From assembly GCA_002269645.1 (NCBI GenBank), contig NIVC01003810.1:1-32461 (forward strand): a stretch of DNA of 32,461 bases, given 5' to 3'. Positions 3,975 through 32,461 of this stretch are shown in pieces (position 1 is the first letter of the stretch; each line of letters opens with the position of its first letter). The notes under the pieces were generated by a model that saw only the letters and a program-made list of their open reading frames with translations, made no database searches and had not been told where the DNA came from. A program made the translations under genes and the position numbers. This DNA comes from Macrostomum lignano (lineage: Eukaryota).

Positions 3975-4015
3975 TTTGACTAAGTGCAGATCCCCTCTCG
4001 TCTCTGCCCACCCAG

Positions 4016-8910: not shown

Positions 8911-9216
8911 TGTTGGCAAGAGAAGGTACATTTATTTATTTCTGATTTAAGATATTTATATATTATTTAGTTTTTGTTTCTGCGTACATTGAAGTCCAAC
9001 CCCCCTCTCTGAATCATGTAGCTCGGACGTGCGCTCAGCACCCACCCCCTTTTACGTAAGTGCTAGTGCTAATATATATTTGCAGTCTCAGTCGCTCGAG
9101 AGTGTGCAACTGCGGTTTTTTTGTTAGTTAAAATTTGCATTGGGCTGCGGCCCTTAAAGTCGATTCATTTCTGTGAAGACTCGTTTTTTGCATGACTCGA
9201 CAAGAGCGCAAGATCA
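8911..9216 (+). repeat. BEL/Pao 5' LTR
   Basis: TGTTGGCAAG...GCAAGATCA; 303/306 identical to the 3' LTR by manual comparison. Confidence 0.97.
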
Positions 9217-9218
9217 TC

Positions 9219-9236
9219 TGGTAGCAGAGCGTGGTT
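9219..9236 (+). promoter_or_regulatory. Primer-binding site complementary to initiator tRNA-Met 3' end
   Basis: TGGTAGCAGAGCGTGGTT starts 2 nt after the 5' LTR. Animal tRNA-iMet ends ...CUCUGCUACCA. Confidence 0.85.
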
Positions 9237-9258
9237 GTTTACTCGTTACAATTGATCA

Positions 9259-10803: not shown

Positions 10804-11197
10804 TTCGAATAGCCAAAACAATGAACAGGCGGAAGGGCGAAAAGGTTGTGGTCTCTGCGGAGAACAGCACGGAGTTTGGAGCTGCCCAAGGTTTCAACGA
10901 ATGGAACCTGGAGCCAGATGGGCGATGGTCCGTGACAAGCGCCTGTGCTTTTGCTGCTTGGGAGCAAACCATCTAGCCGGTGCGTGCAAGCGAGCGAGAG
11001 TGTGTGGTGTTGAGGGCTGCAAAGCAAACCATAATCGGCTGCTGCATCAACGAGGGCCGGCGGCGACAACGGCAAATCCGCATGAAGGGGGTCGCCCAAA
11101 ACGATCGAAAGACCAAAGTCCTTCCAGGAGAAGAAGAGCGCAGTTCAAGAGCCGCAAGAAGCATGCACCCTACTGGCCAGAACACCGTCGTCAATAG
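10790..11197 (+). pseudogene. BEL/Pao gag zinc-knuckle region (frameshifted relative to both neighbours)
   Basis: CGLCGEQHGVWSC, CFCCLGANHLAGAC and CGVEGCKANHNRLLH, the triple Cys/His array typical of BEL gag. Confidence 0.9.
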
Positions 11198-14100: not shown

Positions 14101-15095
14101 GTTGAATGTGCTGTGTGCAAAAGAGAGAAAGCTCGTCCCATTGTGCAACAGATGGCGCCACTGCCTGATGCCCGTGTCGCAGGATCCTTAAAAGCCTTGA
14201 CGAACGTAGCCGTCGACATGGGAGGGCCGTTCGTCACTATTTAAGGCCGATTCAAGAAGAGGCAGAAACGCTATTTGGCGCTGTTCACATGCCTCGAGAC
14301 GCGAGCGGTACACCTCGAGATGACCTACAGCCTTGACGCGGACTCTTTCTTGAACGCCTTCTACCGAATGGTGAACAGGCGTGGCTTACCCAAGGCTATG
14401 TATTCTGACAACGGTGGCAACTTTGTAAAAGGTGCAGATGAGCTGCGACTTCTGGAGGAGCTGGACAGGACAAGGATCAGTCGCGAGACATCCAAGCAGC
14501 GAGTCAAGTGGAACTTCCAGCCGCCAGCCGCCACGCACTTTGGTGGAGCGCACGAGGTGATGATTCGGGCTGCGAAGCGAGCGCTACACGCGATTCTGGG
14601 CAGCGCAGATGTCACCGACGAGGAACTTCAGTCAGCGATCACTGGAGCGGAGGCTCTTATCAACTCGCGCCCCATCACCTACCAATCGGCGAATCCGAGA
14701 GACGAAGAGCCACTGACGCCAAACCACTTCCTGCACGGTCAAGCTGGTGGACAATTCGCGCCGGATGTGCCCGACGACGTCGCGGCTGACCCGAGGCGGC
14801 GGTGGCGGCGCGTCCAAGAACTCGTGAGGCACGTCTGGCGACGCTGGATGCGCGAATGGCTGCCAGGGTTGCAGCCGAGAGCCAAGTGGGCGGGACCACA
14901 GCGTGATTTACAGCCAGGTGATCATCAAAGCATCAATCAGTCGTCATCAAAGCAGACTCACCGCGTGGATACTGGCCGTTGGGACGAGTAGTCGAAGTCT
15001 ACCCGGGTCCAGACAATCGAGTCTGGGTGGCCAAGGTCCAGGTCGGTGGGACGGTATTCGTGCGGCCTGTGAGCAAACTGTGCTATCTCGAGTGA
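11197..15095 (+). pseudogene. BEL/Pao pol: aspartic protease, RT, RNase H, integrase; two premature TAA (12934, 14242) and a frameshift near 14923
   Basis: IALRTVPV...VLLDDASTRSY (PR); KVRIVFDA, ADIEEMY, YMDD (RT); HSFVDASQEAYGAVVY (RNase H); H-H-C-C and DMGGP...SDNGGNF...E (IN); C-terminus ...[10 protein letters not shown]. Confidence 0.95.
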
Positions 15096-15693
15096 GAGGA
15101 GTTGATTATTTGCTTAAGAATTGTTTGTTTTCTTTTCCGGACTTTTCTGAGTTTACGTTGAGTTTTCAAATTGTTTGTACTGTATCGTGTGCGTTCAGTA
15201 GGCTTTCTGCCAGTTTTGGGCTTTTCAAGCCGTTGCCTTTTTTGATTGTTGGTTTGTGTCTGTTTTTGTTTCTGGTTTTTGAAATCAGATTTTTTCATTT
15301 CGAGCGCAGTTGGCGCATTTTTTTCCTTTGAGTTTGAGCTGTTTGAAGTTTCTGTTAAGTTATGGTGATGGGTTTTTTCAGTCAACCGTTTTCGACTTTA
15401 TTAAAATTGCGAGTTAAAGCTGAGTTGCAATTTTTTAATATTTTTTAATGTTCAGTAGTAACTAATTTCAGTTTGCGGTCTTGCGCATTTTCATTCATTT
15501 CATTCGCGAGTCTTGGTGGCGGGTGGCGAAGCATTTCTTTTTTAGTTTGGCTTTTGAGCTCTTTTGAGCCCTCACGCTTCTCGTGCTGTTCCCAGGCGTT
15601 GTATGTTTTTTTGCTATGGTCCTAGTTTGTCCGTTCGGTTACTAGGTACTCAAGCTCAGTGTTTCCGGTCTTTGTTGCTGACATTGCTCTGTC

Positions 15694-15706
15694 AGGAAGG
15701 GGGGGG
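15694..15706 (+). promoter_or_regulatory. Polypurine tract
   Basis: AGGAAGGGGGGGG directly before the 3' LTR TG. Confidence 0.9.
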
Positions 15707-16012
15707 TGTTGGCAAGAGAAGGTACATTTATTTATTTCTGATTTAAGATATTTATATATTATTTAGTTTTTGTTTCTGTGTACATTGAAGTCCAACCCCC
15801 CTCTCTGAATCATGTAGCTCGGACGTGCGCTCAGCACCCAGCCCCTTTTACGTAAGTGCTAGTGCTAATATATATTTGCAGTCTCAGTCGCTCGAGAGTG
15901 TGCAACTGCGGTTTTTTTGTTAGTTAAAATTTGCATTGGGCTGCGGCCCTTAAAGTCGATTCATTTCTGTGAAGACTGGTTTTTTGCATGACTCGACAAG
16001 AGCGCAAGATCA
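15707..16012 (+). repeat. BEL/Pao 3' LTR
   Basis: Copy of 8911-9216, followed by the TSD CATAAC. Confidence 0.97.
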
Positions 16013-16944: not shown

Positions 16945-17586
16945 TCACTGCACTGGCAGACGCAGGGCAATCCTGGCTCGCAACACCCTGGCAATCAGCT
17001 GCTCCTTGTAGAGCAGCATGGCTGGATCCCGCACGGACTTTTTCTCCAGACCCCGGCCCCAGCTGCGGTAGTGGTGCAGTCCTGCTGTTTCGAATTTAAC
17101 GTATTCGGTGCTTCTCCCATTAAAATAGCGCCACACATTGTGCACCCCCAGAATGCGGACATGATGGGGCTGGGCGATCATCTTCGACCTGGATATCGGC
17201 GAATAGATCTCGGCCTCGCGGCGCAGCTTGAGTAGAGCGCTCAGCTTCAGACCAGTGATGGTGGCATTACGCGAGACCTCGGGATCGCTGGCCCATTCAA
17301 GCCGAAAGAATGCGTTCTTAAATGCCAGACCACCGATGCTACCGTCCGACATGAAAGCTCGGGTCAGGTCCCGCCAGCTGCGAAACCCCTCTCCTCTCGG
17401 CACAATCACTTCGTCCATGTCGGTGAAAACCGCGAACTCGTACTGAGCCGCAGCGCGCATCAGACAGTCCTGCAGCATCGCGCACTGGCCGAAATACTTC
17501 AATTCTACAACGTAGCCGGGAGGCTGCGGGTCGACGTCTACATTCAATGGCGGTTGGAAGGGAAGGACGGTGACGTCACTGGCGAA
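16945..17586 (-). CDS. Glycosyltransferase family 92 (DUF23) copy 1, exon 4 (catalytic C-terminal part)
   Basis: Acceptor CTGCAG|TTC, phase 0. It translates as FASDVTVLPF...YFGQCAMLQDCL...AVFTDMDEVIVP (DxD)...RSKMI...VHNV...LHHYR...*, which are GT92-type motifs. Confidence 0.85.
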   Translation of the reverse strand, partial: FASDVTVLPFQPPLNVDVDPQPPGYVVELKYFGQCAMLQDCLMRAAAQYEFAVFTDMDEVIVPRGEGFRSWRDLTRAFMSDGSIGGLAFKNAFFRLEWASDPEVSRNATITGLKLSALLKLRREAEIYSPISRSKMIAQPHHVRILGVHNVWRYFNGRSTEYVKFETAGLHHYRSWGRGLEKKSVRDPAMLLYKEQLIARVLRARIALRLPVQ

Positions 17587-18042: not shown

Positions 18043-18271
18043 GTGCTTATTCGAAAGCAGCTCGGTCACTCGCCTGCTCGTTGAGTGCTTGTACACAAAG
18101 AAATGGTCGGCACCGAAAAGGCGGTTCAGTTCCAGCGTCTGCACCAGCTCGTCCACCTTGTTGTACTTGGACTGCAGAGGTGACATGCACACAGCGAATC
18201 TGCCGTTGCGCACCGGCTCGGACGGCAGAGCAAGCACCGGGTGCACTGCGTGGGGCTGACCACAGGCCGAC
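18043..18271 (-). CDS. GT92 copy 1, exon 3
   Basis: Acceptor CCGCAG|G, donor CAC|GTGAGT. It translates as SACGQPHAVHPV...FAVCMSPL...LNRLFGADHFFVYKHS. Phases match both neighbouring exons. Confidence 0.85.
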
Positions 18272-18289: not shown

Positions 18290-18770
18290 AGTTGGGGTTC
18301 TGAGCTTCAGTTTGTATTCTGAGCTTCAGTTTGTATTCTGAGCTTCAGTTTGTATTCTGAGCTTCAGTTTGTATTCTGAGCTTCAGTTTGTATTCTGAGC
18401 TTCAGTTTGTATTCTGAGCTTCAGTTTGTATTCTGAGCTTCAGTTTGTATTCTGAGCTTCAGTTTGTATTCTGAGCTTCAGTTTGTATTCTGAGCTTCAG
18501 TTTGTATTCTGAGCTTCAGTTTGTATTCTGAGCTTCAGTTTGTATTCTGAGCTTCAGTTTGTATTCTGAGCTTCAGTTTGTATTCTGAGCTTCAGTTTGT
18601 ATTCTGAGCTTCAGTTTGTATTCTGAGCTTCAGTTTGTATTCTGAGCTTCAGTTGTATTCTGAGCTTCAGTTGGGATTCTAAGCTTCAGTTGGGATTCTG
18701 AGCTTCAGTTGGGATTCTGAGCTTCAGTTTGTATTCTGAGCTTCAGTTGGGATTCTGAGCTTCTGAGCTC
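18290..18770 (-). repeat. 19-bp satellite (AACTGAAGCTCAGAATAC/A core in gene sense; full unit AACTGAAGCTCAGAATACA), ~25 copies, at the 3' end of GT92 copy 1 intron 2
   Basis: Plus-strand unit TTCTGAGCTTCAGTTTGTA, with GGGATTC variants at one end. Confidence 0.97.
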
Positions 18771-18784
18771 CGGCTCACAAGTTT

Positions 18785-19330
18785 ATCAACGCGTGCCGTG
18801 AGCTATCAGACTCGGGTTCTCAGGCTCTCCATTCAAAGTCAACGCCTTTGTCAATTGAGTCCAGATTCTCATCGCCTTACCATCACCAAAGCAATGGAAG
18901 GACTGAATCTGCAGTTAAGTCTGCCAAAAAAAGAATATCAGTTGATCCTGGGACTATCGAAATATGACATAGACAGGAAAAGATGGCAAAAGGCATACTG
19001 TTCCCTTCATCATTCTGTATGGACATCCGATGATGGAGGAATTCCCTCCCTGTTCATTGACGAAGCTGTAACCCCCAATGGCACAGCACAATTCAGCAGA
19101 TTGAGCAGACCGCATCTGAAATTCACAAGACAGTGAGTGATGCAGCAGTGCCACAAGTCTAAGAAGAGTCTCGACCGAATCCGAATCGGCTCGATTGTGG
19201 TTCTACACGACCCGAAAAGTAAGCTGTGGCAGCGGAGGAGTGTGATGGCGGAGGTAGGCAAACACGGACTCCTTGATCAAGCTAGCTTGTGGTTGAAAAC
19301 TACGAGAAATGGTATCTACGTCGGGCCAAC
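18785..19330 (+). mobile_element. Decayed Ty3/gypsy integrase C-terminal fragment
   Basis: HHQSNGRTESAVKSAKK (18881; SNG-E-AVK catalytic Glu motif), then RIGSIVVLHDPKSKLWQ..V.AEV (GPY/F-like module), with frameshifts. Confidence 0.65.
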
Positions 19331-19723
19331 ACTGCCTTGGAGCGCCGATGATCTGCACCAGGCGACTAGGAAGCTGGTGGATCTAGAATGTACCAAGACG
19401 GACAACGAGAGACCTGAGGATCAGAGGTCTCGCGTTAGTGCCAGGTCCACAAAACATCCCGCCAGTTCGGTTTCAGTGCATCCGATTGGGGCAGTCGAGA
19501 GCTCAGTGTCAACAGAGAAGAGATCTGATGCTCATTTGATGGGTCTGCTTGTGGAAAGGCAATTTTTGCAGCTTCCAAAACTTTACATATCTTGTACAAC
19601 AGAATAACCAAATATATATATATTTGTTCTAAAGGCAAAAACTAATTTTGCTACTGAAGAAAGAATTGATGAAATCATTTTTTCAAGTAACCTATCCGTT
19701 TATTCCAGTATCTGTGTACTCAC

Positions 19724-20042
19724 CTAGCAAAGGACACGCCATACGGTACCTCCCGATCTCTGGCCGGATTAATGCAGCTGATGACCACAGAGTCGTAGGG
19801 CCAGGCGTGCCCCCAGGCACAATCTCCGCAGTGGCTGGCACGGCCACCATCGCCGACCGCTGATACCACGCCGATGTATCTCGTCGATACCACAGTTGGC
19901 AAAGCTGGCCGTCTACCCGGCCACCCAAGGCGATGCCGACCACTCGGACAACAGGCCGTCTGGAGCTGTCTCTTCGGTCATAGAAGGCCGAGTAGGTAAA
20001 CAAACTTCTGTCCGCGGGATTGCTGCTCAGAAACTGATGCTC
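19724..20042 (-). CDS. GT92 copy 1, exon 2 (contains an apparent 1-nt deletion near 19810-19814)
   Basis: Acceptor ATACAG|GAG, donor AG|GTGAGT. It reads EHQF..TYSAFYDRR..VVRVVG..LCQLWY, and after a frame change YDSVVISCINP..EVPYGVSFAR. It aligns with the intact paralogous exon at 24641-24942. Confidence 0.8.
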
Positions 20043-20156
20043 CTGTATTGGACAAAGGAGCATCATATTTCCTTTAAGATGAAATGCTTGCCTGCCTTGA
20101 CATTCACTGACCTTTCAAAGTTAGCCATGTAAATACGCGGGTTGTTGTCTACCTTT

Positions 20157-20470
20157 AGAGGGGTTGTAGCCTAGAGGTTAGGGCATCGGACTCACGACTG
20201 AAAGGTCGAGGGTTCGATTCTCGACCTACTCGGAACAATTTGTGTCCTTCAGCAAGGCACTTAACTCTGCATTGCTTCAGTTCACCCAGCTGTAAAATGG
20301 GTGCCAGCATTAGCTGGGGTAATTGAGGGTGTGTGTGGCGACCCCCCAGTCCTTGGACTGAACAGCCGTACGCAGCATTCAGATGCGCCGCGCAATAGCT
20401 GCGGCTGAGCTGTCGGTTGCACATCTGGCCATTAAGTCAGGTGCAATCAATTATTAATTATTATATTTAT
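20157..20470 (+). mobile_element. tRNA-derived SINE with CORE-like central domain
   Basis: A box TAGCCTAGAGG (~20167) and B box GGTTCGATTC (20211). These are followed by TGTGTCCTTCAGCAAGGCACTTAAC...CTTCAGTT...CTGTAAAATGGG (20241-20301), closely resembling the MIR CORE consensus as I recall it, and an AT-rich tail. Confidence 0.8.
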
Positions 20471-21489
20471 TGCCGAAACAAAGTTCCAACAGCTGAAAAC
20501 GTTACCTGAAAATATTCTAATTTGAGGCTCCGACTCGTTCCAGAGTTATTCGCAGGTGAATATAAACAGAGAGTTATGCAGAATGGTTAGTTAACTCAGA
20601 ACTACGAGCGAACGTCTGCTTACGAGCGTATCAGCTCCTCATGCAGTTGAAAGTAGGGCAAAAGCTGGGCTACCTGTTTACGTACGGGGGAGGACGAGCG
20701 ATCCCGGATACACCCGCACCGATCAAGGACTCCAGTGTCACGACCAGAGAGTAATAAGACACTGTAACGTTATACACCCATGGGTTGCGTGTACGTTAAG
20801 GGAAGTTGTCGCAAATGGATATAAAATAAACACGCGTTTTTTCGAGGGGAGGAGTGGATCATGAGCAGGGAGTATGCGCGTAGGACACAGTGTACGCTGT
20901 ACTAAAATATCCAACTGCTTCTGGCATATCGCACGTACTTGCCGGCAATTGTCCTATTAGCTCACAAGCCCACACCAGCGCAGCGCTGATGCGGATTCAA
21001 ATATTCCGCTTTGATCGCAACACCATTTGCCTGCCGCCCCGGGGGAAGCGAAGAAGCGCTCTGGAGTCCTCGGAGAATCGCAATGCCAGTTTAAGGGCGT
21101 GGATCGATCGCCACGGTAAATTCCACCAGAGCTGAAGCTACATGGGGACGTAAAAAGTAACTCTGGCTGTAACACTATACTGAAATAGCGAAAGTTCCAG
21201 TTTTCGCGATACTTCTGAACATGTTTGCAATTTCCGTACTCTCCAAGCCAGATTTTCTGATATTTATTACGGACTTATTTTTGTTAGGCCACAAATTCTT
21301 GAACACGGCTTTTACCTGACATGACTTCGACAGTCGTTTTGAAGTGATGTATATTTCTCAGAAGCTTTTTAGCAAAAATAGCGATTTGCTGAATTTATGT
21401 CAGCTTTTAAAGTCATACCATGTCTCAGCCAAAATTTCAAACCCCAGCGCGTGTGATTCAAAAATTATTTTAAAGGGTAAAAAAATTAC

Positions 21490-21723
21490 CTGGCCAAAGG
21501 CAGGAGAATGCGATGCATTTGTGCGACACCAATGCACACGACGAGCCTCATGCGTCTCAGCCATGGTCACGTGACTAACGTCCGCTAAAGAGTCGCTAGC
21601 CTTGTTCAGTGGTCTGATGAAGCGCAGACCCGCTATTAAAATCATTAATACTGCGAAACACAGAAGGCAGTGACGCCCGGAGTTGCCAATCGAGTGTCGG
21701 CCCAGCCTGATTGAGAAGAGCAT
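21490..21723 (-). CDS. GT92 copy 1, exon 1 (type II membrane anchor)
   Basis: ATG at 21723; hydrophobic CLLCFAVLMILIAGL segment; 78 codons ending GGCCAG|GTAATT; phase 0 joins exon 2. Confidence 0.75.
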
Positions 21724-21864
21724 TTCTGCCGATTAGGAATTCCAAACAGCTGATAGCGATGCTTGATTCTGCCGTGGCTCTCTGCGAAATCTGTTGAGCA
21801 CCAGCTGTGATGCTGTGTGCTAGCCTCTCTCTGGTGTGCTGGGTTTGGTCAGAATAGCCACTAA

Positions 21865-22370
21865 TATATAGTGAATGTAAGCCTTGCTGTAAGTGTTGCG
21901 AAGTTCTCAAGCTGCCGCTGCAGCGAGGCTGTCCTGACCAATGGTTCGGGAGAACAATGCAGACTCTACCCTATTTCCAGTCAGCCTTCTAATGCGTGGA
22001 GTTTCTCAGTACGTTTTTTACTCTCTCAGAGAAGCACAATGAAAGATGCACCGGCCCTTGTGTGAATTGGCTCTATATTATCTTGCCACAAACCTCTAAA
22101 CTGGCCACAACGATTTGAAATTCGCTGCGCAGTTGTCGTAAGCAGCAGAGTATATTGGCGTACGGGTTTTGGGGCCAAAGAACTGTGCTAAATTATCAAA
22201 GCAATTTTTCTCTGTTCTCGCTATTGTACTGCTAAATCCACCGCAAGAATTTAAACGTACTGAAGGTAGAGTCTGCATTGTTCTCCCGAACAATTGGTCA
22301 GGACAGCCTCGCTGCAGCGGCAGCTTGAGAACTTCGCAACACTTACAGCAAGGCTTGCATTCACTATATA
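21865..22370. promoter_or_regulatory. Divergent promoter region: mirrored CCAAT and TATA-like boxes
   Basis: CCAAT at 21938-21942 and ATTGG at 22293-22297. TATATA at 21865-21870 and 22365-22370, ~70 bp downstream of each CCAAT and ~140 bp upstream of each ATG. Confidence 0.45.
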
Positions 22371-22510
22371 TTAGTGGCTATTCTGAGCACACCTAGCACA
22401 CCGAGAGAGGCTAGCTCACAGCATCACAGCTGGTGCTCAACAGATTTTGCAGAGAGCCACGGCAGAATCAAGCATCGCTATCAGCTGTTTGGAATTCCTA
22501 ATCGGCAGAA

Positions 22511-22744
22511 ATGCTCTTTTCAATCAGGCTGGGCCGACACTCGATTGGCAACTCCGGGCGTCACTGCCTTCTGTGTTTCGCAGTATTAATGATTTTAATA
22601 GCGGGTCTGCGCTTCATCAGCCCACTGAACAAGGCTAGCGACTCTTTAGCGGACGTTAGTCACGTGACCATGGCTGAGACGCATGAGGTGCGTCGTGTGC
22701 CATGGTGCAGCATAAATTGGCTGTATTCTCCTGTACTTGGCCAG
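22511..22744 (+). CDS. GT92 copy 2, exon 1
   Basis: ATG at 22511; 78 codons; donor GGCCAG|GTAAAC; same TM segment as copy 1. Confidence 0.75.
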
Positions 22745-22820
22745 GTAAACTCTTAAGAAGTGTAAAGTTTTTTTACTTTCTCCTGACAAACAAACTTTCC
22801 CATTTCAATTGCGCACAGAT

Positions 22821-23055
22821 TGCAGCCATGGATGAAGGAATAGAAAGGATCGCTCATCTGAAAGCGAGTCTGGACAAGACTTCCTTAAATTTGGGATATT
22901 CCCCCCATGAATTTCATTGGCTGGTGGAGTTTAATAATAGTCCCCCTAAGTTCTTACTGGCTGCAGCTTGTACGCGGGGGAAATTCCAAAGTCCCGATTA
23001 ACGTTAAACATCGTGAAGATGAGCGATCCTTTCTATTCTTTCATCAATGATTGCA
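22821..23055. mobile_element. Small MITE-like element (imperfect ~38-bp terminal inverted repeats)
   Basis: 22821-22858 TGCAGCCATGGATGAAGGAATAGAAAGGATCGCTCATC matches the reverse complement of 23018-23055. No TSD was established. Confidence 0.45.
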
Positions 23056-24640
23056 GCCCATCTATTCCTTCGAAGGATGGTTGTGGTTATGCTGTACGAG
23101 CGTAGATATATGATTCAATACTTGGTTTTGAGTGCCATAGACATTTCAGTAAGAAGAGCCAAGTATTGAGTAGTATTGTACCCTTTTGTCTATGGTTTTC
23201 GGCAGTAAGACTTTCGAAAACAACTCAATTGCTTGCCGGCAGTTTTAGATTTTTACCGGAAAATAACGAATGTATTTGGCTCCGGTTCTCCGGTAATGAT
23301 GTTCACCTAGCGATTGACGGACGGGGATTCCAGGTGCCGTGAATGGCCCCACGAAAACAGATAGAGACTTCGGCGCGTAGTATGTTCCATTCTGCTTTTG
23401 AAGAGACAAATAGAAAAGCCTCAGGTAATCGTTCAGGAATCGATCCGCGGTACGCGCTCAAACTCCTGGCAGAGCCCCTTCTCATTGAGGAACTGGCGGA
23501 ACCTTGCCACGTGAAGTTTTCGTCGAGTCTCGGTCGATTCAGGCACACATTCATTCTCAATCCGGTCCAGCATTTGCAAATCTTCGTTAGCTCAGGCAGC
23601 ACTTTAGTGTAGCTTATTTTAAAGGGTTACAATAACGACATGGACAGATTTTTTAACGGCAGCAATTGCTTTACTGAGCTGAAGCCGCGTAGCTGCCAAT
23701 TGCTGCCGAAAAAATCAGTACGGGAGCACGAGAATTGCCTGCAGTGCAATTTGCCTGCGAGCGAATTGCCCGCCAAGTTTTTTCCCGCCGAGGTTTGCCC
23801 GCAAAGCTTTTTTCCTGCAGCGCATTTGGCCACGCGGCAGATTTTGTCTGATTGCCTCTCCATTGCTCAGAAGTCTTAATAAAGAGATTTGACTTGATCA
23901 TCAAGTTTGACTTCAACATCAGTATCTAACGTTACATTGTAATCATGATTGTACGCTCGGATTTCTCGTGCATTAGATGATGACTCTAGCCAACACGCGA
24001 TCACGATCCGTTTGAGCACGCTTTTACACATTTAAATCGTGTCACAATATGCAGACAGTGTTTTAAAATTCCCCCTCATGCGATTCTACGGCTGTACCGC
24101 AATTGCAGACGCTAATTACGTGTACCTACATTTATATTTAAAAAGATTGAGTGTTTCTTAGAATTATGCAGCATCTGATTTATAACATGTGAATTGAAGG
24201 TTTTCTGTGGTTTTCCTTGCTTATACCTCTTTCATTCGAGCGATTTATTCAAGTTTGCGCTGAGCTCTATACAGTGCAGGCCACTGCAGTCTTTAACCGG
24301 AAACCGCATCAGATTTCTAGGCTCAATCGCTCGGGCCAGTGAGGTTTAGAAGCTCTGACGCCTGTAACAGTGGCTTAAAATTAAGACGATTTGAGCGGCT
24401 AATTGAGTCCTCTTGAATTGATAGCTTCTATAACTGTCTTGCATAGCAGGATGCTTGCCAGTTTCTGTTAAAGCAGGTGATCAAAATTAGCCACCATAAA
24501 ATATTGACTAGCCAAGTTTTCTGGCGATCCAGAAGCTAAAGATCATCCCCCATAGAAATTGAAGCATGTTCCATCAATTCATTCCAAAGGCCAATTCAGT
24601 TTCCTAACACAAGACCATCGCCCTCACGCACCCAATGAAG

Positions 24641-24942
24641 GAGTTTCGCTTCCAGAGCATCAGACCAGGCGATCATAACTTGTCTACCTACTCAGCCTTC
24701 CATGACCGGAGGGACAGCTCGAGCAGGCCAGTGGTACGAGTGCTTGCCGTTGCCTTGTTAGGAGGCGGAGGCAAAGTGCTCTGCCAGCTGTGGTATCGGC
24801 GAGCGGCCTCAGTCATGGCGGCCGTGCCGGCTGAAATCGAAGTTATGCCCGATGGTGAGGGCCAGAGCTACGAATCGTGGCTAATCAGCTGCAAGAACCC
24901 GGCCGCTGATGGGGAGGTGCCGTATGCCGTGTCATTCGTCAG
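24641..24942 (+). CDS. GT92 copy 2, exon 2 (later exons not in window)
   Basis: EFRFQS..TYSAFHDRR..VVRVLA..LCQLWYRR..YESWLISCKNP..EVPYAVSFV(R). Donor AG|GTGAGT with the same phase 2 as copy 1; the acceptor is a weaker AAG with CTAAC 30 nt upstream. Confidence 0.8.
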
Positions 24943-25084
24943 GTGAGTGACCAAACTGAACACGGTTCCATTTTGAAGAAAAAACTGACCAAATCTTATT
25001 TTAGAGTCTGTATTAAATTCAAAAGAACCAAGATGTCAAGTGTGAAGTACTTAGGGTTGTTTCGAGGTGGTCTGGTAGGTCTTT

Positions 25085-26033
25085 GAATCCCACCGCTGCT
25101 ACCAGTGAAGTACAGAGCTTCTGCTTCCCGGTTTAGGCACTTAAGTTTACCTTAAGTCATGAGCCTCTTCTCTCGTAAGCCTTCTTCGTAGCTCTCAGAC
25201 GCGTAGGTAGTGCTGCCACCAGTTCCTTCAGGTCTCGGCCTTCGATGAGGTGAGCTTCCCGTCGGAACGAAATAACGAAGTCAACGAACTCAGCACAACA
25301 TGCAGATTTGCAGCTCAACGTACAGGGCAGGGCGTCTCGTCAGCAGTACCTGCCGGGCTTGGTTGGTGGATGGGAGGGCTTTGTTAGCCTCTCACAGGCT
25401 TGGGGTTTGCTTTAGATGGGTCTCAGTCAGACCAATAGCAGAGAACTCAATGTACGCAGACAGAGAACGGGTGTTCAATCTCAGACAAGGGCGCACACGG
25501 GGTCTTAGAAGACGAAACTCTCAGAAGACCAAATCTCGGAAAACTCCTTGACGGAAACAAGGGGAGAAGGGTCCTATTTATAGAGCGGGATTCTCCTCCG
25601 CACAAGACCTCGCACAAGACCTCCGCACGAGACCTTAGAATTGACGTCACTTGAGGTCTGCGGGCACAGTGCGCCAGGCTGTGACTCAGTGTCTATTTTT
25701 AGAAACATGAGTCACTCCTCTCCTTAGGAAAGGGTCTTAGGCACGTGATTCTCCCGCAAACAGGACCAGCGAGTTTCTTTAGGACTCCAAGAAAACAAGG
25801 CCTGTCATGTGAGCAAGTCACATGACAGGAGAAACGGGAATGGAACGAAACAAGGACAGCCCGCAGCAGAGAAGCTGGAGGCTGAGAACAGGAGCACAGA
25901 AAACGAACAGCAAAGAGAGAGAGGGCAGCAAACAGACAGACAAAAGGGAGGCGGGAAGCTGACCAGCGGCAGAGAGCAACCCAGGGCGAGGGCGCGGGCG
26001 AGAGAAACTGCTGCCTAAGTGCGACGCCTAACA
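25085..26033 (-). mobile_element. LTR (25106-26033, ~928 bp) plus tRNA-Leu-type PBS; internal region truncated
   Basis: The minus strand starts TGTTAGGCG and ends TACTTCA. One nt later comes TGGTAGCAGCGGTGGGATTC (25085-25104), complementary to a tRNA-Leu-like 3' end ...GAAUCCCACCGCUGCUACCA. TATAAATA lies at 25575-25582. No second LTR or TSD was found. Confidence 0.65.
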
Positions 26034-26589
26034 TTAAACTAGCGGCTCACTACAAGTGCATTGAAATTGATTTTTGTAAAATTTGTAAATAGATGGTAAA
26101 TAGCTCGTAAACCCTTTCCAATGCTCCTTGCTACTAAGCGTTTCACAATTTCGACACGTAGGACACTGCAATTACTAAATTCGATATTGAAATGTGGACT
26201 GACTGACTGACTCGACGAAGACTTTTACGAGTAGAAAAAATCTTTCGAAGCAGTCGCTCTCTTGTTGAAGTGCTGCGCGCTTCTCGAATCTGTAAAACTT
26301 TCAAAAGCGTGAAATGGAGAAAGAGGCGGCTGGCTCTCCTTAGTAGCGGGTAAGAGTTCACGGTGGAAGAATCGAGCTCAGCTAGCCCGCATTGATAGCG
26401 TCAAGATCCTCGTAAGTCGCGTGAAAATCGCGCCATTAGCCTAAGGAAACTTACCTATTTGGACCTGAAAATCATGGGAGCCTGCGTGATCCAAGGTCAG
26501 ATGCTAAATAAAGTAGGATTGTCATACATTGGTCGCGTGACTCAGGGTCACTTGCGTATGTGGCAGTCACGTGCTTTTCTGTGCTAAAA

Positions 26590-27080
26590 CAGAACAGACG
26601 ATGAGTCATTTTTACTCGCGCATGCGAGTTCCGCCGTCTCCGCTTGCAGCCCACGAATGTGGCAGTGGCTTGCGGAAGCGGGTGTTGGCAGACACCATGT
26701 CCTGCCTCTCCAGGAAGTCCTCCAGTGCTCTGCTGTTGCCGTTCTCACGAGACGTCACAAACAGTCACGACCTACAAAAACCGCGTTTAGGTCTCCGAGG
26801 GCGACCGCTGTGTCACGCAGCGACAGCTCTGCTGCAGCTTTGGTCCTATCAGCGCTCCAACACCTCCACGTCTGGTTGGTCCGCCGATGTGTAGAAAAGG
26901 ATCCATCCGGCACACAGGTCCTTACAGTGAATCCCCGGGTCAGCCTTGATACACCTCCTGCAGAGATTATATCACAGCTTAGGTCGAGCGCTAGCTTTGT
27001 CAGAGCTCCTCTCCGCAAGGCGACCTTGAGGGTGTTCAGCATCCCGACCTTGTGCCTTGTGGTACCGTTGAAATAAGCTT
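26590..27080 (-). mobile_element. Decayed non-LTR retrotransposon apurinic-like endonuclease fragment
   Basis: VGMLN, CDIIS/QEV, RRGGVGALIG, ALGDLNA and N..RALEDFLERQDMVSANTRFRK are APE/EEP motifs in the correct order, with frameshifts and an internal deletion. Confidence 0.7.
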
Positions 27081-27769
27081 TACAGTCGCTGGCGCCAACC
27101 AGAAGATCGGCATGGGCCAGCGCAGCAGCAGCTCGTCGGGCGGCACCACGTAGCCGACCGCGCCGATTTCGCTCACGCCGACGCACGTTCGTTCGCTCCG
27201 CTGCCCTAGCTTGGTCCTGCCACTGTTTGCCGCTTGAAGGTACACCATTTTACCTCAATTTTCATTCAAACTCAGTTTCTCTTTCGACAGTGAGAACTTC
27301 ATCTTCCACACTTCAAGCTTAGCATCTCTGAAACTGCATCCACTTCAGACAAACTCCCTTTCATCACAACTGAAAGTGAAGGTCAATTCTAACCTCTAGA
27401 AAATGCTTCTCTGTGTTCATATTTGTACCAAATTTTTACAGTTGTTCATTAAAGCAGTGTACAATCAGAATCTCCTTTCTGTACAGATAGCTTCGCACCA
27501 AAGCAAACTAAAATTTTGGAAAACGAAATTACACCACAGAGATAGGCACATGTCTAAAAGATTAAAGACTTCACTTCCACTTTCGACAAAGTCCACTTCA
27601 TATCAACAGTCTATGGTCCAGACCTACTGAAACCTCGATATGAAAAGCTAATATAAAAATCTTTGATTAGGGCTACGTCAAACATCATTCACAATATACT
27701 AAATCTCTTAGATCCGACCGGTATTTCAGTCTACAGCCGGAATGCCTGAACCGATTTTTAATAAATGGT

Positions 27770-28120
27770 ACATGAAGAGACGCTGACGGACCCGCTCGAA
27801 TGAAAAGTAGATGCGGCCCATGCTGGCCTGCTGCTCGCCACTTTCAGGATCAGCGACGAGCAATTTTTTTTTCAAACGCGGCACTTTTTTCACCGCGCCT
27901 GCCTGGTCCGTCCAAACGACCTTTTGCGCCGTCAGCGACTCTAAATGGCAGGCCACATCGTCCACGCCGTCGTACTGCCCACAGCCGATGCAGGAGATGC
28001 TGCTGCTGACGCTGCAGACAACCTACCGGCGGCAACAGGCGCGCACTTGGCATTTCGGCGACTGCCATTCGTTCGCTACCTCGCGCAGAGGCGCGCCCTG
28101 TGACGCTTCCTTCTAATAAC
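27770..28120 (+). mobile_element. Probable 3' end of an RTE-like LINE (post-RT C-terminal region), 5'-truncated
   Basis: ...HAGLL.ATFRI.DE..NAALF/HRACLVRPNDLLRRQRL*MAGHIV (RL.LAGH-type motif), then YCPQPMQEMLLLTLQ..., ending near TAATAA. Confidence 0.5.
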
Positions 28121-28450
28121 CCTGACAGAGTATCTTGTTGTTGTTGCTCCGGATAATCTTTCAGACCGAACGGCAGTTTATTCATCACGTACATGTATAA
28201 GGTGCATAAAAAGCTGTTAGCAGTCCATACAGGGAAAGCCTCACATTGTATCAAAGGGAAAGTGAAGAGAGAAAATTTTGGTCCCAACATTTTACATATC
28301 AGTTTTTATTGATCCTCTGATAGTCTTGGGTAACGGTCCTAAATGATGAATTCGCTGAGATTCTGGGGTCAAGGAACAAGCGTAGTGTCCTATCTGGTTT
28401 CCAGACTATGACTAAATCGGAGACCCACTCAGTCGGCTGAGTGCATTTCG

Positions 28451-28928
28451 ACTGAAGCTCAGAATAGAAGCTGAAGCTCAGAATACAAACTGAAGCTCAG
28501 AATACAAACTGAAGCTCAGAATCCCAACTGAAGCTTAGAATCCCAACTGAAGCTCAGAATCCCAACTGAAGCTCAGAATCCCAACTGAAGCTCAGAATCC
28601 CAACTGAAGCTCAGAATCCCAACTGAAGCTCAGAATTCCAACTGAAGCTCAGAATACAAACTGAAGCTCAGAATACAAACTGAAGCTCAGAATACAAACT
28701 GAAGCTCAGAATACAAACTGAAGCTCAGAATACAAACTGAAGCTCAGAATACAAACTGAAGCTCAGAATACAAACTGAAGCTCAGAATACAAACTGAAGC
28801 TCAGAATACAAACTGAAGCTCAGAATACAAACTGAAGCTCAGAATACAAACTGAAGCTCAGAATACAAACTGAAGCTCAGAATACAAACTGAAGCTCAGA
28901 ATACAAACTGAAGCTCAGAATACAAACT
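28451..28928 (+). repeat. 19-bp satellite (AACTGAAGCTCAGAATACA), ~25 copies, mirror image of 18290-18770
   Basis: Same unit and same TCCC and CTTAGAA variants as the array in copy 1, in opposite orientation. Confidence 0.97.
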
Positions 28929-29245
28929 TGTAAGAGCCGAGAATTTAGAGTAAGTTTACGAAGTATATTTTGATGCACGATAATTTACGAGCGATTAAAT
29001 AGTCAGCGATGATAGATCGATTAAAGTGACTCACCCAACTGGGGTGGTGGGCATGTACAGAGAAGAAAGCGAGATGCAAGTACATATACTAATAGAGCAG
29101 CCCTCACCCGACGGCCCAAACCAAACGCAACCCTACATCACTCTCCCCCAAGAAAAATACATGGGATAAAAAACGGGATAAAACAAAAGCAAACAAAAAA
29201 AAGTTCATGCAACGCGAAAAAAGTCCCGATCAGAAATAAAGCACG

Positions 29246-30640
29246 TCAACAGGTCGCCGTGTAAAAATCCGGCCGCCGGCGCTGCCTGCCCGACCGGCGC
29301 ACCGTGTTGCCGGGTTCAGCCGCGTCCGGGTTGCGCAGCGGCTCCCAGGCGTCCGGGCCGGCCAGCTGGCCCGCGGCGTCCAGGACGCTCTGACAGTCGT
29401 CCTCGGTGGCCGGCTTGGCTGGCGGCCTGCCGCTCAGATTCGGTCGGTCGATAAAGCGCTTCAAGCGGCGGTCGTGGTGAACCAGCAAGCGGCGCCTGCC
29501 GTTCACAGCCTGCAGCCGGTAGTTCACAGGGCTGATCTTCTTAAGGACGATGAACGGGCCGGACCACCGGTTCGACAGCGACTTGCACTGGCCGCGCTTC
29601 ATCGCATGGTGCGTCAGCATCACTCGGTCACCGGTCTTGAAGTCGGTAGTCTCTGCCCCTAGGTTGTAGAACTCGTGCTGCGATTTCTGGGCCGTGTGCA
29701 GGTGCGCCCGCACTACCTGAAAGCCGCGCCTGATTCTCGCCTGCAGGTCCGCGCAGTCCTGCGGCTGGTCGCACTGCCCACCGAGTGCCAAGTCGACCGG
29801 CAGTCTGGGCTCGATGCCGCGGAGCACTTTGAACGGCGACTCGCCCGTGGAGCTGTGCTCAGAGCTGTTGTAGGCCCACACGACATAGGGCAGCAGGGCA
29901 TCCCAGCTGGCCTGATTCTCTGAGCAGAATGCGGAGAGCATGTTGCCCAGCGTCCTATTGAACCTCTCGACGTTCCCGTTGCCGCTGGGGTGAAACGGTG
30001 AGGTCCTCGATTTTTCTGCTCCGAGCAGCGCGCAGGTCTGCTTGAAAACTTTGGCCTCAAACTGGCGACCTTGGTCCGAGTGCACGACCTCCGGAACTCC
30101 GTGCTGCAGCACCACGCAGGTCACCAGAGCCTCGGCTACCGTCTTGGCGTCGATCTGGCCGAGGGCCGCCGCCTCCACCCACTTTGAAAATGTGTCGACA
30201 AAGCAGATGATGTAGCGCTTGCCAGACTCGGTGACTGGCAGTGGGCCCTTGATGTCGAGTTGCATGACAGCCCACGGCTTGGCCGGTAGCGGCTGCCGCA
30301 CCAGCTCAGCGAGCGCTCGCTTTGGCGCTCCCTTGCGTCGTTGGCAGACCAGGCAGCTCCGCACCCAGTCCCGCACGTCCTCGCGCATGTCCGGCCACCA
30401 GGAACGCTCGCGCAGAGCCTGCAGCACCGCCGCTGTCCGAGGTGACCGCGCTCGGCCGGTCGTGTGCGCCTGTTGCAGCAGCTCCGCTCTCATGTGCTGA
30501 GGGATCACCGGCAACCCGTTGTGGAGCAGTGCGCCGTCCGGTGACAGCGTCAGATAGGGCAGCAGCTTCTGGACCGATGCACTCACCGCCGCCGGAACTT
30601 GAAAGTTGGGCTGGAGCATCGCGTGCCGAACCCGCGTGCA
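29246..30640 (-). pseudogene. gypsy integrase
   Basis: WWPDMREDVRDWVRSCLVC; LDIKGPLP..VDTFSKW; HSDQGRQF; GNGNVERFNRTL; WSGPF. It is out of frame with RNase H by a 1-nt lesion near 30635. Confidence 0.9.
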
Positions 30641-31372
30641 GAACCTGGTCCTGGTCCTGCTCGTCAGGCAGATTAGCGATCTGGAACTGCACCGCCGCTG
30701 CTCGGCTGAGGGTGTCTGGCACGATGTTCTCCTTGCCGGGCCGGTACAGGATTTCCAGGGGGAACTCCTGAATGAGCTGTAGCCAACGTGCCAGCCGACC
30801 GGTTGGTTCCTTCGCGTTGAGCAGCCCAGTGATCGGCTTGTGGTCGGTGAACACCTGGATCTTGCAGCTGTTGCTCAGGTACATGCGGAACTGCTTGAGG
30901 CTCCAAACAATCGCGAGCAGCTCCCGGTCCGTGGTGCTGTAGTTGCGCTCTGCCTTGCTCAGCGTCCGGGAAGCGTAGGCCACTGGCAGCTCCTGGCCGT
31001 CGCGCTCCTGGCTGAGCACCGCACCCAAGGCCACAGCACTGCTGTCACAGCTGATGACGATAGGCCTGCTGAAGTCGGGCAGCTGGAGCACCGGGGCCTG
31101 GGTCAGCGCGTCCTTCAACTTGTCCAGCACCGCAGCATGCTCTGACGTCCACACGAAGCCGCCGTGACCTGCGGAAACCTGCGGTAGAAGCTGAGCATGC
31201 CGATGATGCGTCGAACATCCTCCTCAGACTGCGGCTCCGGCATCCGCCTGATCGCCTCGACCTTCTCCGCGGCAGGTGCGATGCCGCTCTCAGAGACTTG
31301 GTGACCCAGGTACGTGACGCTCCGGTAGGCAAAGAAGCTCTTGCCTGGGTTCAGCCATGTGCCTGCTTGGTC
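30641..31372 (-). pseudogene. gypsy RT C-terminal remnant and RNase H
   Basis: LNPGKSFF..VTYLGHQVS..GI.P..EKVEAI..MP.P....VRRIIGMLSFYRRF; LQLPDF..ISCDSS..ALGAVLSQ..VAYASRTLSKAERNYSTTDRELLAIVW..FTDHKP. Confidence 0.9.
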
Positions 31373-31870
31373 TCGGTCGTCACGTCCACCACTTTAACTG
31401 ACCTTGGCGGTACCACGACGGCGCCCTGAACTCTGGCGATGATCACTGTGGGTACCAAGCAACAAGACAGCGGGCCATCTTGCTTGGAATCGCAGTTACT
31501 GAACGGAACCGCCTCACCATCGAATGCGACTGTCTTGGCACCCTGGTCGATGCTGAACTGCGATCTGGCCGCCTTGCTCACGAAATCCATCCCCAGGATG
31601 AAGTTTGGGCGAATCCCTCTGACCACCAGCACGTCCATTTGTCTGCGCAGCTGATGACTGAGTCGCACCGTAATGCTCACGCTTCCTAACAGCTCGAGAA
31701 CGGAGCCGTCCACGGACACAGGCCTGACATCTGCCGGCTTCAGCTCGCAGCGACCGTCCAGCTCTCTCAAAGCAACGTCGCTGATCAGCGAGGTCTGCGC
31801 TCCGGTGTCCAGCAGCCAGCGGCACGGCTTGCCGTTTGCCTCTCCAGGTATAAAAATAGCATGAAGCACG
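31373..31870 (-). pseudogene. gypsy aspartic protease
   Basis: RWLLDTGAQTSLIS...ILGMDF. Confidence 0.88.
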
Positions 31871-31916
31871 GATTGCTCCTGGGTTGGTGTGGGTCCCGCA
31901 CCCGTTGCACCAACCC

Positions 31917-32350
31917 TTAAAAGTTTCCCGAAGCCTTCGATGGGCAGACAGAGGCCTTGTGCCCCCGCCCAGAGCACTTGTGCAGATGATCGGACCCGGC
32001 TGTTTCTCTCGCTGCTGACATTGCGCTGCACGGTGTCCGAGCTGGCCGCATTTGAAGCAGCCGCCTCCTCGCTGTTGACGGCGACGCCGAGTGTCGGTAC
32101 CCGACTGTACGCTGACCCTCGCGATGAGCTCCTCCATGCGTTTCTCCAGTCGTCCAGGCGGTCCTCGCTTGGTTCTGCCGATGATGTAGCGCTGACGGCT
32201 CTGACTGCCGCCACCGACTGTCGCCCAGCCAGCTCCTCCAGCCGGCGCCCCGCTGCAGCAGAGTCTCCAGGCTGGAGGTCTCTGCGACCTCTGCCTTAAG
32301 CAGGTTGTCACGAATTTCGGCCTTGACAGCTTCAGAAGCTTGAAGCGCAC
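31917..32350 (-). pseudogene. gypsy gag C-terminal part with zinc knuckles (frameshifted)
   Basis: CFKCGQLGHRAAQC (CX2CX4HX4C). A second knuckle, C.KCSGRGHKASVC, is restored by adding 1 nt near 31981. Confidence 0.8.
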
Positions 32351-32461
32351 ATCTCGGTCTCGCTGAACAATTGAGTCCTCCGGTCTGGCTTTCTGGCTGT
32401 AGCAGCTTCAGTTAAAGCCAGAGCTCAACGCAGTGTCTCGGTATCTCCACGTTTTTTTCGC

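What the first reader, a model, noticed from the sequence alone, without database searches (positions are those of the whole stretch)
19724..24942. Head-to-head GT92 gene pair whose promoters and first exons form a palindrome
Seen: what looks like a foldback element (485-bp arms, 294-bp spacer) is two copies of a CCAAT/TATA promoter, 5' UTR and 78-codon TM exon. Both arms end exactly at GGCCAG|GT donors and splice in phase 0 to paralogous exon 2 copies pointing away from each other. Known: GT92 enzymes (nematode GALT-1, plant GALS) are type II Golgi beta-1,4-galactosyltransferases. Inference: two enzymes with diverged lumenal domains share an essentially identical promoter and Golgi-targeting anchor, so they could be co-expressed and co-localised from one compact divergent unit.
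Basis: partly seen in the sequence, partly recalled or inferred. Interest (0 to 1): 0.72.

Follow-up and report, generated by a model that had tools for sequence, protein, structure and literature searches.

The report
Inverted GT92 gene pair, partly homogenised
Two neighbouring copies of a flatworm (Macrostomum lignano) glycosyltransferase gene point away from each other, and their starts look almost identical because that stretch was recently copied from one to the other; this is an ordinary kind of gene duplicate, and both genes are already annotated.

Summary
Arms 21486-21970 and 22265-22748 are 94.6% complementary around a unique 294-bp spacer. Each carries ATTGG and TATATATT motifs, a 5' leader and a 78-codon signal-anchor exon ending at GGCCAG|GT.

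The window is Macrostomum lignano. Both genes already exist as UniProt "Glycosyltransferase family 92" models.

The foldback is the best-preserved part of a much larger, old inverted duplication of a whole four-exon GT92 gene. The left copy runs 21723 to 16945 on the minus strand. The right copy runs from 22511 past the window end.

Near-identity (97.6%) covers only 21546-21970 and 22265-22688. The last 56 nt of exon 1 are 71% identical, about the same as exon 2 (69%, dS about 0.96). Introns do not align.

Exon 3 and a 30-residue block of exon 4 are again nearly identical, so patchy gene conversion explains the pattern best.

The predicted splice junctions match a paralog's conserved exon structure and one existing gene model.

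Caveats:
- The left copy has a 1-nt frameshift here, in the run at 19810-19814.
- The right copy has a Gypsy element in intron 2, and its catalytic exons lie outside the window.
- The right-type protein has lost two conserved motifs.
- Co-expression is untested.

Interest is low.

The parts
21486..21970 (-). Left arm of the inverted repeat. It holds the putative core promoter (TATA at about 21863-21870), the 5' leader and exon 1 of the left GT92 gene.
   Evidence: 94.6% identical to the right arm.
21971..22264 (.). Unique 294-bp spacer at the centre of the palindrome.
   Evidence: It has no self-complementarity above shuffled controls.
22265..22748 (+). Right arm. It holds ATTGG at 22292-22296, TATATATT at 22365-22372, the 5' leader and exon 1 of the right GT92 gene.
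21546..21970 (-). Left half of the recently homogenised (gene-conversion) tract. It is 97.6% identical to 22265-22688.
   Evidence: 10 differences in 425 positions, against 16 in the next 56. Fisher p = 3e-10.
22265..22688 (+). Right half of the homogenised tract. It ends after codon 59 of exon 1.
21490..21723 (-). Left gene, exon 1 coding part: 78 codons with a signal-anchor segment and a phase-0 donor GGCCAG|GTAA.
   Evidence: It is identical to the N-terminus of UniProt model P0019.
19724..20042 (-). Left gene, exon 2. It is 319 nt, one short of the required 320, with the frameshift in the C5/G5 run at 19810-19814.
   Evidence: P0019 and P0005 read VPGGHAWPYD through this point, so they are in frame.
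18298..18763 (.). 19-bp tandem array in left intron 2. It ends 26 nt before the exon 3 acceptor.
   Evidence: It is 96% identical to the inverted array at 28451-28928.
18043..18271 (-). Left gene, exon 3 (229 nt). This is where the Pfam GT92 domain starts (FAVCMSPL...).
   Evidence: It is the same length as exon 3 of paralog P0002.
16945..17586 (-). Left gene, exon 4 up to the stop codon. It carries the GT92 catalytic core: FTDMDE, GVHNVW and LHHYRSW.
   Evidence: PF01697, E = 6.7e-31, for the assembled left protein.
22511..22744 (+). Right gene, exon 1 coding part: 78 codons with donor GGCCAG|GTAA.
24641..24942 (+). Right gene, exon 2: 302 nt, an AAG acceptor, and a phase-2 donor CAG|GTGAGT.
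   Evidence: It is 100% identical to residues 16-115 of UniProt GT92 protein P0001. It has the same length and acceptor type as the paralog's exon 2.
28451..28928 (.). 19-bp tandem array in right intron 2. It is the mirror image of the left array and is cut short by a retroelement insertion.
28929..32461 (-). Ty3/Gypsy-type LTR retroelement, antisense to the right gene and inserted into the array. It runs off the window, so right exons 3-4 are not in the window.
   Evidence: the array breaks at ...AAACT|TGTAAG; integrase and RNase H domains; aspartyl protease.

Best explanation
This is an old inverted (head-to-head) duplication of a complete four-exon GT92 glycosyltransferase gene in Macrostomum lignano.

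**Layout.** The two copies sit back to back around a 294-bp unique spacer. Each kept its own copy of the core promoter, its leader and its signal-anchor exon.

**Divergence.** Most of the duplicated sequence has drifted far apart. Exon 2 has dS of about 1 and the introns are unalignable.

**Homogenised patches.** Several patches were later copied from one paralog to the other by non-allelic gene conversion between the inverted copies:
- the inner 425 bp (promoter, leader and codons 1-59);
- the 19-bp array together with exon 3;
- a block inside exon 4.

The striking "foldback" is simply the innermost conversion tract plus 56 nt of still-alignable coding sequence.

**What is shown.** The repeat, the gene structures, GT92 membership, and the step change in divergence.

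**What is inferred.**
- Conversion as the homogenising process.
- TATA-directed divergent transcription from the two arms.
- Type II Golgi topology.

**What follows and what stays open.** As a by-product, the two paralogs currently have nearly the same core promoter and membrane anchor. Whether both are expressed and active is not known.
For: - **Repeat and spacer:**
- **Species and prior annotation:**. P0001 (A0A1I8H984), P0005 and P0019 are all named 'Glycosyltransferase family 92 protein', Macrostomum lignano.
- **Left gene:** its exons 3-4 are in the window, and the assembled protein matches PF01697 at E = 6.7e-31.
- **Conserved exon structure in paralog locus L001:** exon 2 is 302 nt, exon 3 is 229 nt, and the phases match.
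- **Step change in divergence.** Codons 1-59 give dS 0.024. Codons 60-78 give dS 0.48. Exon 2 gives dS 0.96 and dN 0.32. Fisher p = 2e-9.
- **Mosaic amino-acid identity between left and right types**:
  - exon 1, residues 1-59: 98%;
  - exon 1, residues 60-78: 53%;
  - exon 2: 59%;
  - exon 3: 95%;
  - exon 4: 65%, with an identical 30-residue block.
- **Mirror-image 19-bp arrays** with the same internal order of variant units, placed just upstream of exon 3.
- **Arm differences** are 25 substitutions and 1 indel, which is real divergence and not the pattern of read errors.
- **Possible start site.** UniProt model P0005 starts 33 nt downstream of the TATA box, in leader sequence. This fits a start site there, but it is indirect evidence.
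- **How common this is.** Head-to-head pairs make up about 10-21% of linked duplicates in animals (PMC3194840).
Against: - Gene conversion is inferred from a single genome. Without an outgroup species, a later re-duplication or replacement of the 5' module cannot be separated from conversion.
- Exons 3-4 of the right copy were seen only as database proteins (P0001, P0020) from another assembly, not as DNA in this window. Their physical linkage to the right arm is therefore assumed.
- No transcript evidence could be reached.
- The left copy is frameshifted in this assembly.
- One right-type model (P0001) has a frameshift in exon 3.
Confidence: 0.8

Rival explanations
1. At least one of the two copies at this locus is a decaying pseudogene. 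On this reading the pair is not two co-expressed enzymes, and the shared 5' module has no functional meaning.
For: - The left exon 2 is 1 nt short, which gives a frameshift at 19810-19814.
- The right copy carries a Gypsy insertion in intron 2.
- Right-type proteins have GVNYVW in place of GVHNVW and HHYSIG in place of HHYRSW. Those motifs are conserved from flatworm paralogs to a nemertean homolog.
- Right-type proteins show 38 unique changes in exon 4 against 16 for the left type (p = 0.003).
- P0001 has an out-of-frame exon 3, and P0005 has several frame breaks.
- No NCBI (transcript-based) protein was found in the clusters of either gene.
Against: - The frameshift sits in a homopolymer in a PacBio-derived genome, and two other database copies are in frame.
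- Intronic antisense retroelements are often tolerated.
- Exon 2 has dN/dS of about 0.33, so there was purifying selection for most of the time since duplication.
- DxD is kept in both copies: DMD and DTD.
- P0020 has an intact exon 3.
Confidence: 0.35
2. The near-identity of the promoter, leader and anchor module is kept by selection, with conversion events favoured because they keep the two paralogs co-regulated and co-localised.
For: The tract covers exactly the regulatory and targeting parts: 22265-22688 includes the TATA box, the leader and the transmembrane segment.
Against: - Other homogenised patches lie in exon 3, in an intronic satellite and inside exon 4. Conversion is therefore not confined to the regulatory module.
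- Synonymous and non-coding sites are as conserved as coding ones. That is the signature of recent copying, not of constraint.
- There are no expression data.
Confidence: 0.1
3. The arms are the terminal inverted repeats of a foldback-type mobile element or another dispersed repeat, and they only mimic exons.
For: The overall shape fits: long inverted arms around a short spacer.
Against: - Exon 1 is homologous to the first exons of other GT92 paralogs, in both the RRVPWC...SP..Q end and the anchor segment.
- The arm ends where that paralog exon ends.
- There is no other copy in the 32-kb window, nor in about 70 kb of other fetched loci, about 49 kb of it M. lignano.
- Other paralogs have different first exons.
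Confidence: 0.02
4. The palindrome is an assembly artefact, either a missed-adapter PacBio read or a chimeric join of homeologous copies.
For: The M. lignano assemblies are PacBio-based and highly redundant (PMC5730564).
Against: - Missed-adapter artefacts give perfect palindromes without a unique spacer.
- Here there is a 294-bp unique spacer, 25 substitutions between the arms, 31% divergence in exon 2, and unrelated introns.
- Left-type and right-type genes exist as separate models in another assembly.
Confidence: 0.03

Closest known systems
Divergently transcribed inverted-duplicate gene pairs with concerted evolution, such as C. elegans hsp-16 pairs and Drosophila Hsp70Aa/Ab at 87A (from my own knowledge, not checked here)
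   Same: Two paralogs lie head to head. Each has its own copy of the promoter inside an inverted repeat around a short unique centre, and the copies are kept similar by gene conversion.
   Different: In those cases the whole genes stay nearly identical and co-regulation has been shown experimentally. Here only patches are homogenised, the lumenal domains have diverged to about 60% identity, and expression is unknown.
Large palindromes with arm-to-arm gene conversion on primate sex chromosomes (Rozen et al. 2003, listed in the references of PMC3194840)
   Same: Inverted arms surround a unique spacer, with non-allelic conversion between the arms.
   Different: Those arms span tens of kb to Mb at more than 99.9% identity along their whole length. 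This is a structure of about 12 kb or more that has mostly decayed, with conversion tracts of a few hundred bp.
Ordinary head-to-head linked duplicates in animal genomes (PMC3194840)
   Same: They share the orientation class, which makes up 10-21% of linked duplication events in the surveyed animals.
   Different: Nothing essential. This is one more example, in a flatworm genome that is more than half repeats (PMC5730564).
GT92 glycosyltransferases: C. elegans GALT-1 and plant GALS1-3 (from my own knowledge). A nemertean homolog, P0007, is named 'beta-1,4-galactosyltransferase galt-1-like'
   Same: The Pfam PF01697 domain, a DxD motif and an N-terminal signal anchor are shared.
   Different: Identity to non-flatworm homologs is only about 30-37%. 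Substrate and activity have not been tested. The right-type copy lacks two motifs that are conserved in the other sequences.

Membership tests
Glycosyltransferase family 92 (Pfam PF01697) | A significant match to the Glyco_transf_92 profile | tested here: met
   The left protein assembled from window exons scores E = 6.7e-31, 108 bits against a cut-off of 23. Right exons 1-2 alone give no hit. P0001, which contains the identical exon 2, matches at E = 7.9e-15 over profile positions 73-213 only.
Glycosyltransferase family 92 (Pfam PF01697) | The DxD metal-binding motif of GT-A enzymes | tested here: met
   By reading the alignment, the left copy has FTDMDE and the right type has STDTDE. No structural check was made.
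Glycosyltransferase family 92 (Pfam PF01697) | The other motifs conserved in homologs: GVHN[VI]W and HHYRxW | tested here: inconclusive
   The left copy keeps both. Right-type proteins P0001 and P0020 have GVNYVW and HHYSIG. What this means for activity is unknown, and those exons are not in the window.
Type II Golgi glycosyltransferase | A short cytoplasmic tail, a single N-terminal signal-anchor helix, and a lumenal stem plus catalytic domain | tested here: met
   Basic residues are followed by a hydrophobic stretch at residues 19-37, with a Kyte-Doolittle mean of 2.48. The GT92 domain lies C-terminal to it. Localisation itself cannot be tested here.
Beta-1,4-galactosyltransferase (GALT-1 or GALS type) | Demonstrated galactosyl transfer | not testable with these tools
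   There is only family-level homology, about 30-37% identity to the nearest non-flatworm proteins.
Inverted-duplicate pair with arm-to-arm gene conversion | Inverted arms around a unique spacer, each holding one paralog | tested here: met
Inverted-duplicate pair with arm-to-arm gene conversion | Sharp discordance of divergence between adjacent segments of the same gene pair | tested here: met
   dS is 0.024 for codons 1-59, 0.48 for codons 60-78, and 0.96 for exon 2. Fisher p = 2e-9. Identity is a mosaic across exons 3-4.
Inverted-duplicate pair with arm-to-arm gene conversion | Segment-wise phylogeny with an outgroup species that shows paralogs grouping within the species only in the converted tracts | not tested
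   No genome of another Macrostomum species could be reached with the tools.
Bidirectional or divergent promoter pair | Two start sites on opposite strands less than 1 kb apart, both active | not testable with these tools
   The two ATG codons are 787 bp apart and the two TATA boxes about 495 bp apart. There are no CAGE, RAMPAGE or RNA-seq data at hand. P0005 begins 33 nt after the TATA box, which is only a hint.
Foldback or TIR transposon | Multiple dispersed copies, target-site duplication, no host-gene homology in the arms | tested here: not met
   No further copy is present in the window or in loci L001-L003. The arms hold a conserved GT92 first exon. Genome-wide copy number was not testable.

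The most novel reading that the evidence does not exclude
Gene conversion between the inverted copies is favoured by selection specifically over the promoter, leader and membrane-anchor module. The two GT92 paralogs, with diverged lumenal domains, would then be kept as a co-regulated, co-localised enzyme pair. That would be a modular form of concerted evolution.
Probability: 0.1. Interest if true: 0.55.

Novelty: new member of a known kind. Interest (0 to 1): 0.22.

Why it matters
The significance is mainly practical.

**Annotation.** The report gives corrected gene models for two M. lignano GT92 genes. The existing UniProt models of the right copy lack the signal-anchor exon and use a different junction. 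It also flags a probable homopolymer error, or a null allele, at 19810-19814.

**Read mapping.** The 425-bp near-identical tracts will make short reads, CAGE tags and guide RNAs ambiguous between the two genes. The 16 differences in the last 56 nt of exon 1 are the usable discriminators.

**Biology.** This is a tidy example of patchy gene conversion between inverted paralogs. It is not a new principle.

Tried and rejected
**Searches that found nothing**
- The word-indexed protein search with right exons 1+2 returned nothing. This was a false negative: the exhaustive search then found a 100% match.
- Pfam on exons 1-2 alone gave no GT92 hit.
- No GT92 exons were visible in the three plus-strand frames of 24600-29300. 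This is explained by the Gypsy insertion at 28929.
- ARAGORN and Rfam found no RNA genes. The tRNA-like stretch at about 20155-20230 also failed an Rfam E-value search.
- Exact look-ups of the two unspliced exon 1 ORFs and of P0019 found no contig on record. Independent assemblies of this locus could therefore not be inspected.
- A literature search for M. lignano together with GT92 found nothing.

**Checks on other loci**
- Paralog loci L001 and L003 have no inverted partner within 10 kb upstream, and they contain neither the arm nor the 19-bp satellite.
- L002 is an unrelated ENA contig.

**Readings considered and rejected**
- The foldback-transposon and assembly-artefact readings were rejected; the reasons are under the rival explanations.
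- The AAG acceptor of right exon 2 was considered as a possible defect. It was dropped because the NCBI-annotated paralog P0002 uses AAG at the same position.

**Left unused**
- The third word-indexed protein search was not spent on the 78-residue exon 1, given the false negative.


Full report

Yes. The repeat finder and BLAST both give arms at 21486-21970 and 22265-22748. They are 485 and 484 nt long and 94.6% identical with one indel, and they are separated by 294 bp.

The spacer is not self-complementary, and the two first introns share nothing above shuffled controls. No further copy of the arm exists in the window.

Each arm carries:
- an ATTGG motif, which is CCAAT in inverted orientation;
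- a TATATATT motif;
- about 110 nt of leader;
- a 78-codon ORF ending at GGCCAG|GTAA.

The ORF has basic residues followed by a hydrophobic stretch at residues 19-37, with a Kyte-Doolittle mean of 2.48.

Outward-pointing exon 2 copies lie at 20042-19724 and 24641-24942. They are 69% identical in nucleotides and 59% in amino acids.

**2. Where does it come from, and is it GT92?**

Exons 1-2 alone give no Pfam hit, and a word-indexed protein search found nothing. An exhaustive HMMER search with right exon 2 found a 100% match. The match, P0001, is UniProt A0A1I8H984, named 'Glycosyltransferase family 92 protein', from Macrostomum lignano. All close relatives found come from the same species.

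The rest of the left gene is in the window but outside the finding's coordinates:
- exon 3 at 18271-18043;
- exon 4 at 17586-16945, up to the stop codon.

The assembled left protein matches PF01697 at E = 6.7e-31.

Right exons 3-4 are not in the window. A Ty3/Gypsy-type LTR element, antisense to the gene, is inserted at 28929 into a 19-bp tandem array in intron 2 and runs to the window end.

**3. Are the predicted splice junctions right?**

No transcript data were reachable, so the evidence is comparative. It is strong.

Paralog P0002 is NCBI protein PAA81709, on contig NIVC01000516.1 of assembly GCA_002269645.1, and was fetched as locus L001. It shows:
- a phase-0 donor after ...SPISAQ;
- an exon 2 of exactly 302 nt, entered through an AAG acceptor;
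- an exon 3 of exactly 229 nt.

These are the same lengths as right exon 2 and left exon 3.

Paralog proteins read ...RRVPWC....SP..Q|EF.F.S continuously across the proposed junction.

The UniProt models of the right copy (P0001, P0020) use a different junction. It joins GAG|GTGCGT at 22688/22689 to an acceptor at 24613/24614. Those models start at an internal Met and therefore lack the anchor.

**4. What the foldback really is**

The divergence between the arms is not uniform:

| Segment | Differences | Identity |
|---|---|---|
| First 425 positions (promoter, leader, codons 1-59) | 10 | 97.6% |
| Last 56 nt of exon 1 | 16 | 71% |

The second value is about the same as for exon 2. Synonymous divergence jumps from 0.024 (codons 1-59) to 0.48 (codons 60-78) and 0.96 (exon 2; dN 0.32). 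The step is significant at p = 2e-9.

So the arms end at the donor only because coding sequence is still alignable up to the exon edge, while the introns are not. The recent event ended inside exon 1.

The same pattern recurs further out. A 19-bp array lies just upstream of left exon 3 at 18298-18763. It is mirrored at 28451-28928 with 96% identity and the same order of variant units.

At the protein level, left type against right type gives:

| Region | Amino-acid identity |
|---|---|
| Exon 1, residues 1-59 | 98% |
| Exon 1, residues 60-78 | 53% |
| Exon 2 | 59% |
| Exon 3 | 95% |
| Exon 4 | 65%, with one identical 30-residue block |

In that comparison the right-type exons 3-4 are taken from P0020 and P0001.

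This mosaic is the usual signature of patchy non-allelic gene conversion between old paralogs. The underlying structure is a palindromic duplication of the whole gene. It runs from 16945 to beyond 32461, and the foldback is its best-preserved, innermost patch.

**5. Functional state**

*Left copy.* Exon 2 is 319 nt where 320 are needed. The missing base lies in a C5/G5 run at 19810-19814. P0019 and P0005 read through in frame. Both published M. lignano assemblies rest on PacBio data. This may therefore be a homopolymer error, or a null allele of one of several near-identical copies.

*Right copy.*
- Its intron 2 carries the Gypsy element.
- Right-type proteins keep DxD (DTD) but have GVNYVW for GVHNVW and HHYSIG for HHYRSW. 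Those motifs are conserved in the left copy, in paralog P0002 and in two non-M. lignano homologs, one of them nemertean (P0007).
- Exon 4 of the right type has 38 lineage-specific changes against 16 for the left type (p = 0.003).
- One right-type model (P0001) has an out-of-frame exon 3, and the other (P0020) is intact.

*Expression hint.* The clusters holding these proteins contain no member from the transcript-based NCBI annotation. This is weak evidence against strong expression.

Exon 2 has dN/dS of about 0.33, which shows constraint over most of the pair's history.

**6. Mechanism**

*Shown:* two divergent GT92 genes. Each has its own copy of a TATA-containing upstream region and of a signal-anchor exon, and these are nearly identical over 425 bp.

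*Inferred:*
- Each arm acts as a core promoter. The only hint is that model P0005 begins 33 nt after the TATA box, in leader sequence.
- The products are type II Golgi enzymes.
- Conversion between the inverted copies produced the identity.

Co-expression and co-localisation would follow as a by-product of that identity. They are not demonstrated. Selection for them is not needed to explain the data, because an intronic satellite, exon 3 and part of exon 4 were homogenised too.

**7. Comparison with what is known, and novelty**

Head-to-head pairs make up 10-21% of linked duplicates in surveyed animals (PMC3194840). Inverted pairs with concerted evolution are classic, for example C. elegans hsp-16, Drosophila Hsp70 at 87A and sex-chromosome palindromes. 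The first two examples are from my own knowledge.

The M. lignano genome is more than half repetitive, with 21% LTR elements and 15% simple and tandem repeats, and the assembly is redundant (PMC5730564). That fits the retroelements, the intronic arrays and the several near-identical copies of each gene seen in the databases. Two copies of a paralog locus (L001 and L003) show no inverted partner within 10 kb upstream, so the arrangement is specific to this pair.

Both genes were already annotated as GT92. No paper discusses them.

**Verdict.** This is a real and correctly read structure, but an ordinary one: a new member of a known kind. Its value is chiefly for annotation and read mapping.

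Noticed in passing
window 8911-16012: A complete, young BEL/Pao LTR retrotransposon on the plus strand, 0.9 kb downstream of the left GT92 gene. Its LTRs are 306 bp, 99% identical and of the TG...CA type. The target-site duplication is CATAAC. It carries gag (DUF1759), protease, RT, Peptidase_A17 and integrase domains, with the pol frame broken into several ORFs.
   Followed up: partly
window 28929-32461: A Ty3/Gypsy-type LTR retroelement on the minus strand, with protease, RNase H and integrase domains. It is inserted inside the 19-bp satellite of the right gene's intron 2 and runs off the window end.
   Followed up: partly
window 18298-18763 and 28451-28928: A 19-bp satellite (CTGAAGCTCAGAATACAAA, about 25 copies) in mirror-image positions in intron 2 of both GT92 copies. 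The introns of paralog P0002 also hold tandem arrays, with periods of 39, 23 and 32 bp, but of unrelated sequence (L001).
   Followed up: partly
window 20155-20440: A tRNA-like stretch in left intron 1, with sequences resembling A and B boxes (GGGGTTGTAGCCTAGAGGTTAGGG...GGTTCGATTCTCG). It is possibly the head of a tRNA-derived SINE. Neither ARAGORN nor Rfam recognises it.
   Followed up: partly
window 22821-23055: A 39-nt inverted repeat, 90% complementary, with 157 nt between the arms, in right intron 1. It looks like a small MITE-type insertion.
   Followed up: no
window 2104-4457: Exons of a methyltransferase-like gene on the plus strand (weak Methyltransf_23 and Methyltransf_12 hits). They are separated by a 1.36-kb TCTG microsatellite at 2617-3975.
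   Followed up: partly
window 328-2064 and 4412-4634: Further tandem arrays with periods of 28, 21 and 60 bp. The 21-bp array (1136-2064, 44 copies) stays open in several reading frames.
   Followed up: no
window 7339-7860: A 52/53-bp triplicated unit on the plus strand, encoding Cys-rich repeats (C..C..G.YQPNAGQT.C). It resembles ephrin-receptor-like or TNFR-type cysteine repeats. There was no Pfam hit.
   Followed up: partly
window 18759-19604: Two adjacent plus-strand ORFs of 125 and 156 aa inside left intron 2, antisense to the gene. Neither has a Pfam match. They may be a degraded mobile-element fragment.
   Followed up: partly
database proteins P0001, P0020, P0005 (UniProt M. lignano models): The existing models of these genes look flawed. 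Right-copy models lack the signal-anchor exon and use a junction at 22688/24614. P0005 starts in leader sequence without a Met and skips half of exon 2. P0019 skips the first 24 codons of exon 3.
   Followed up: partly
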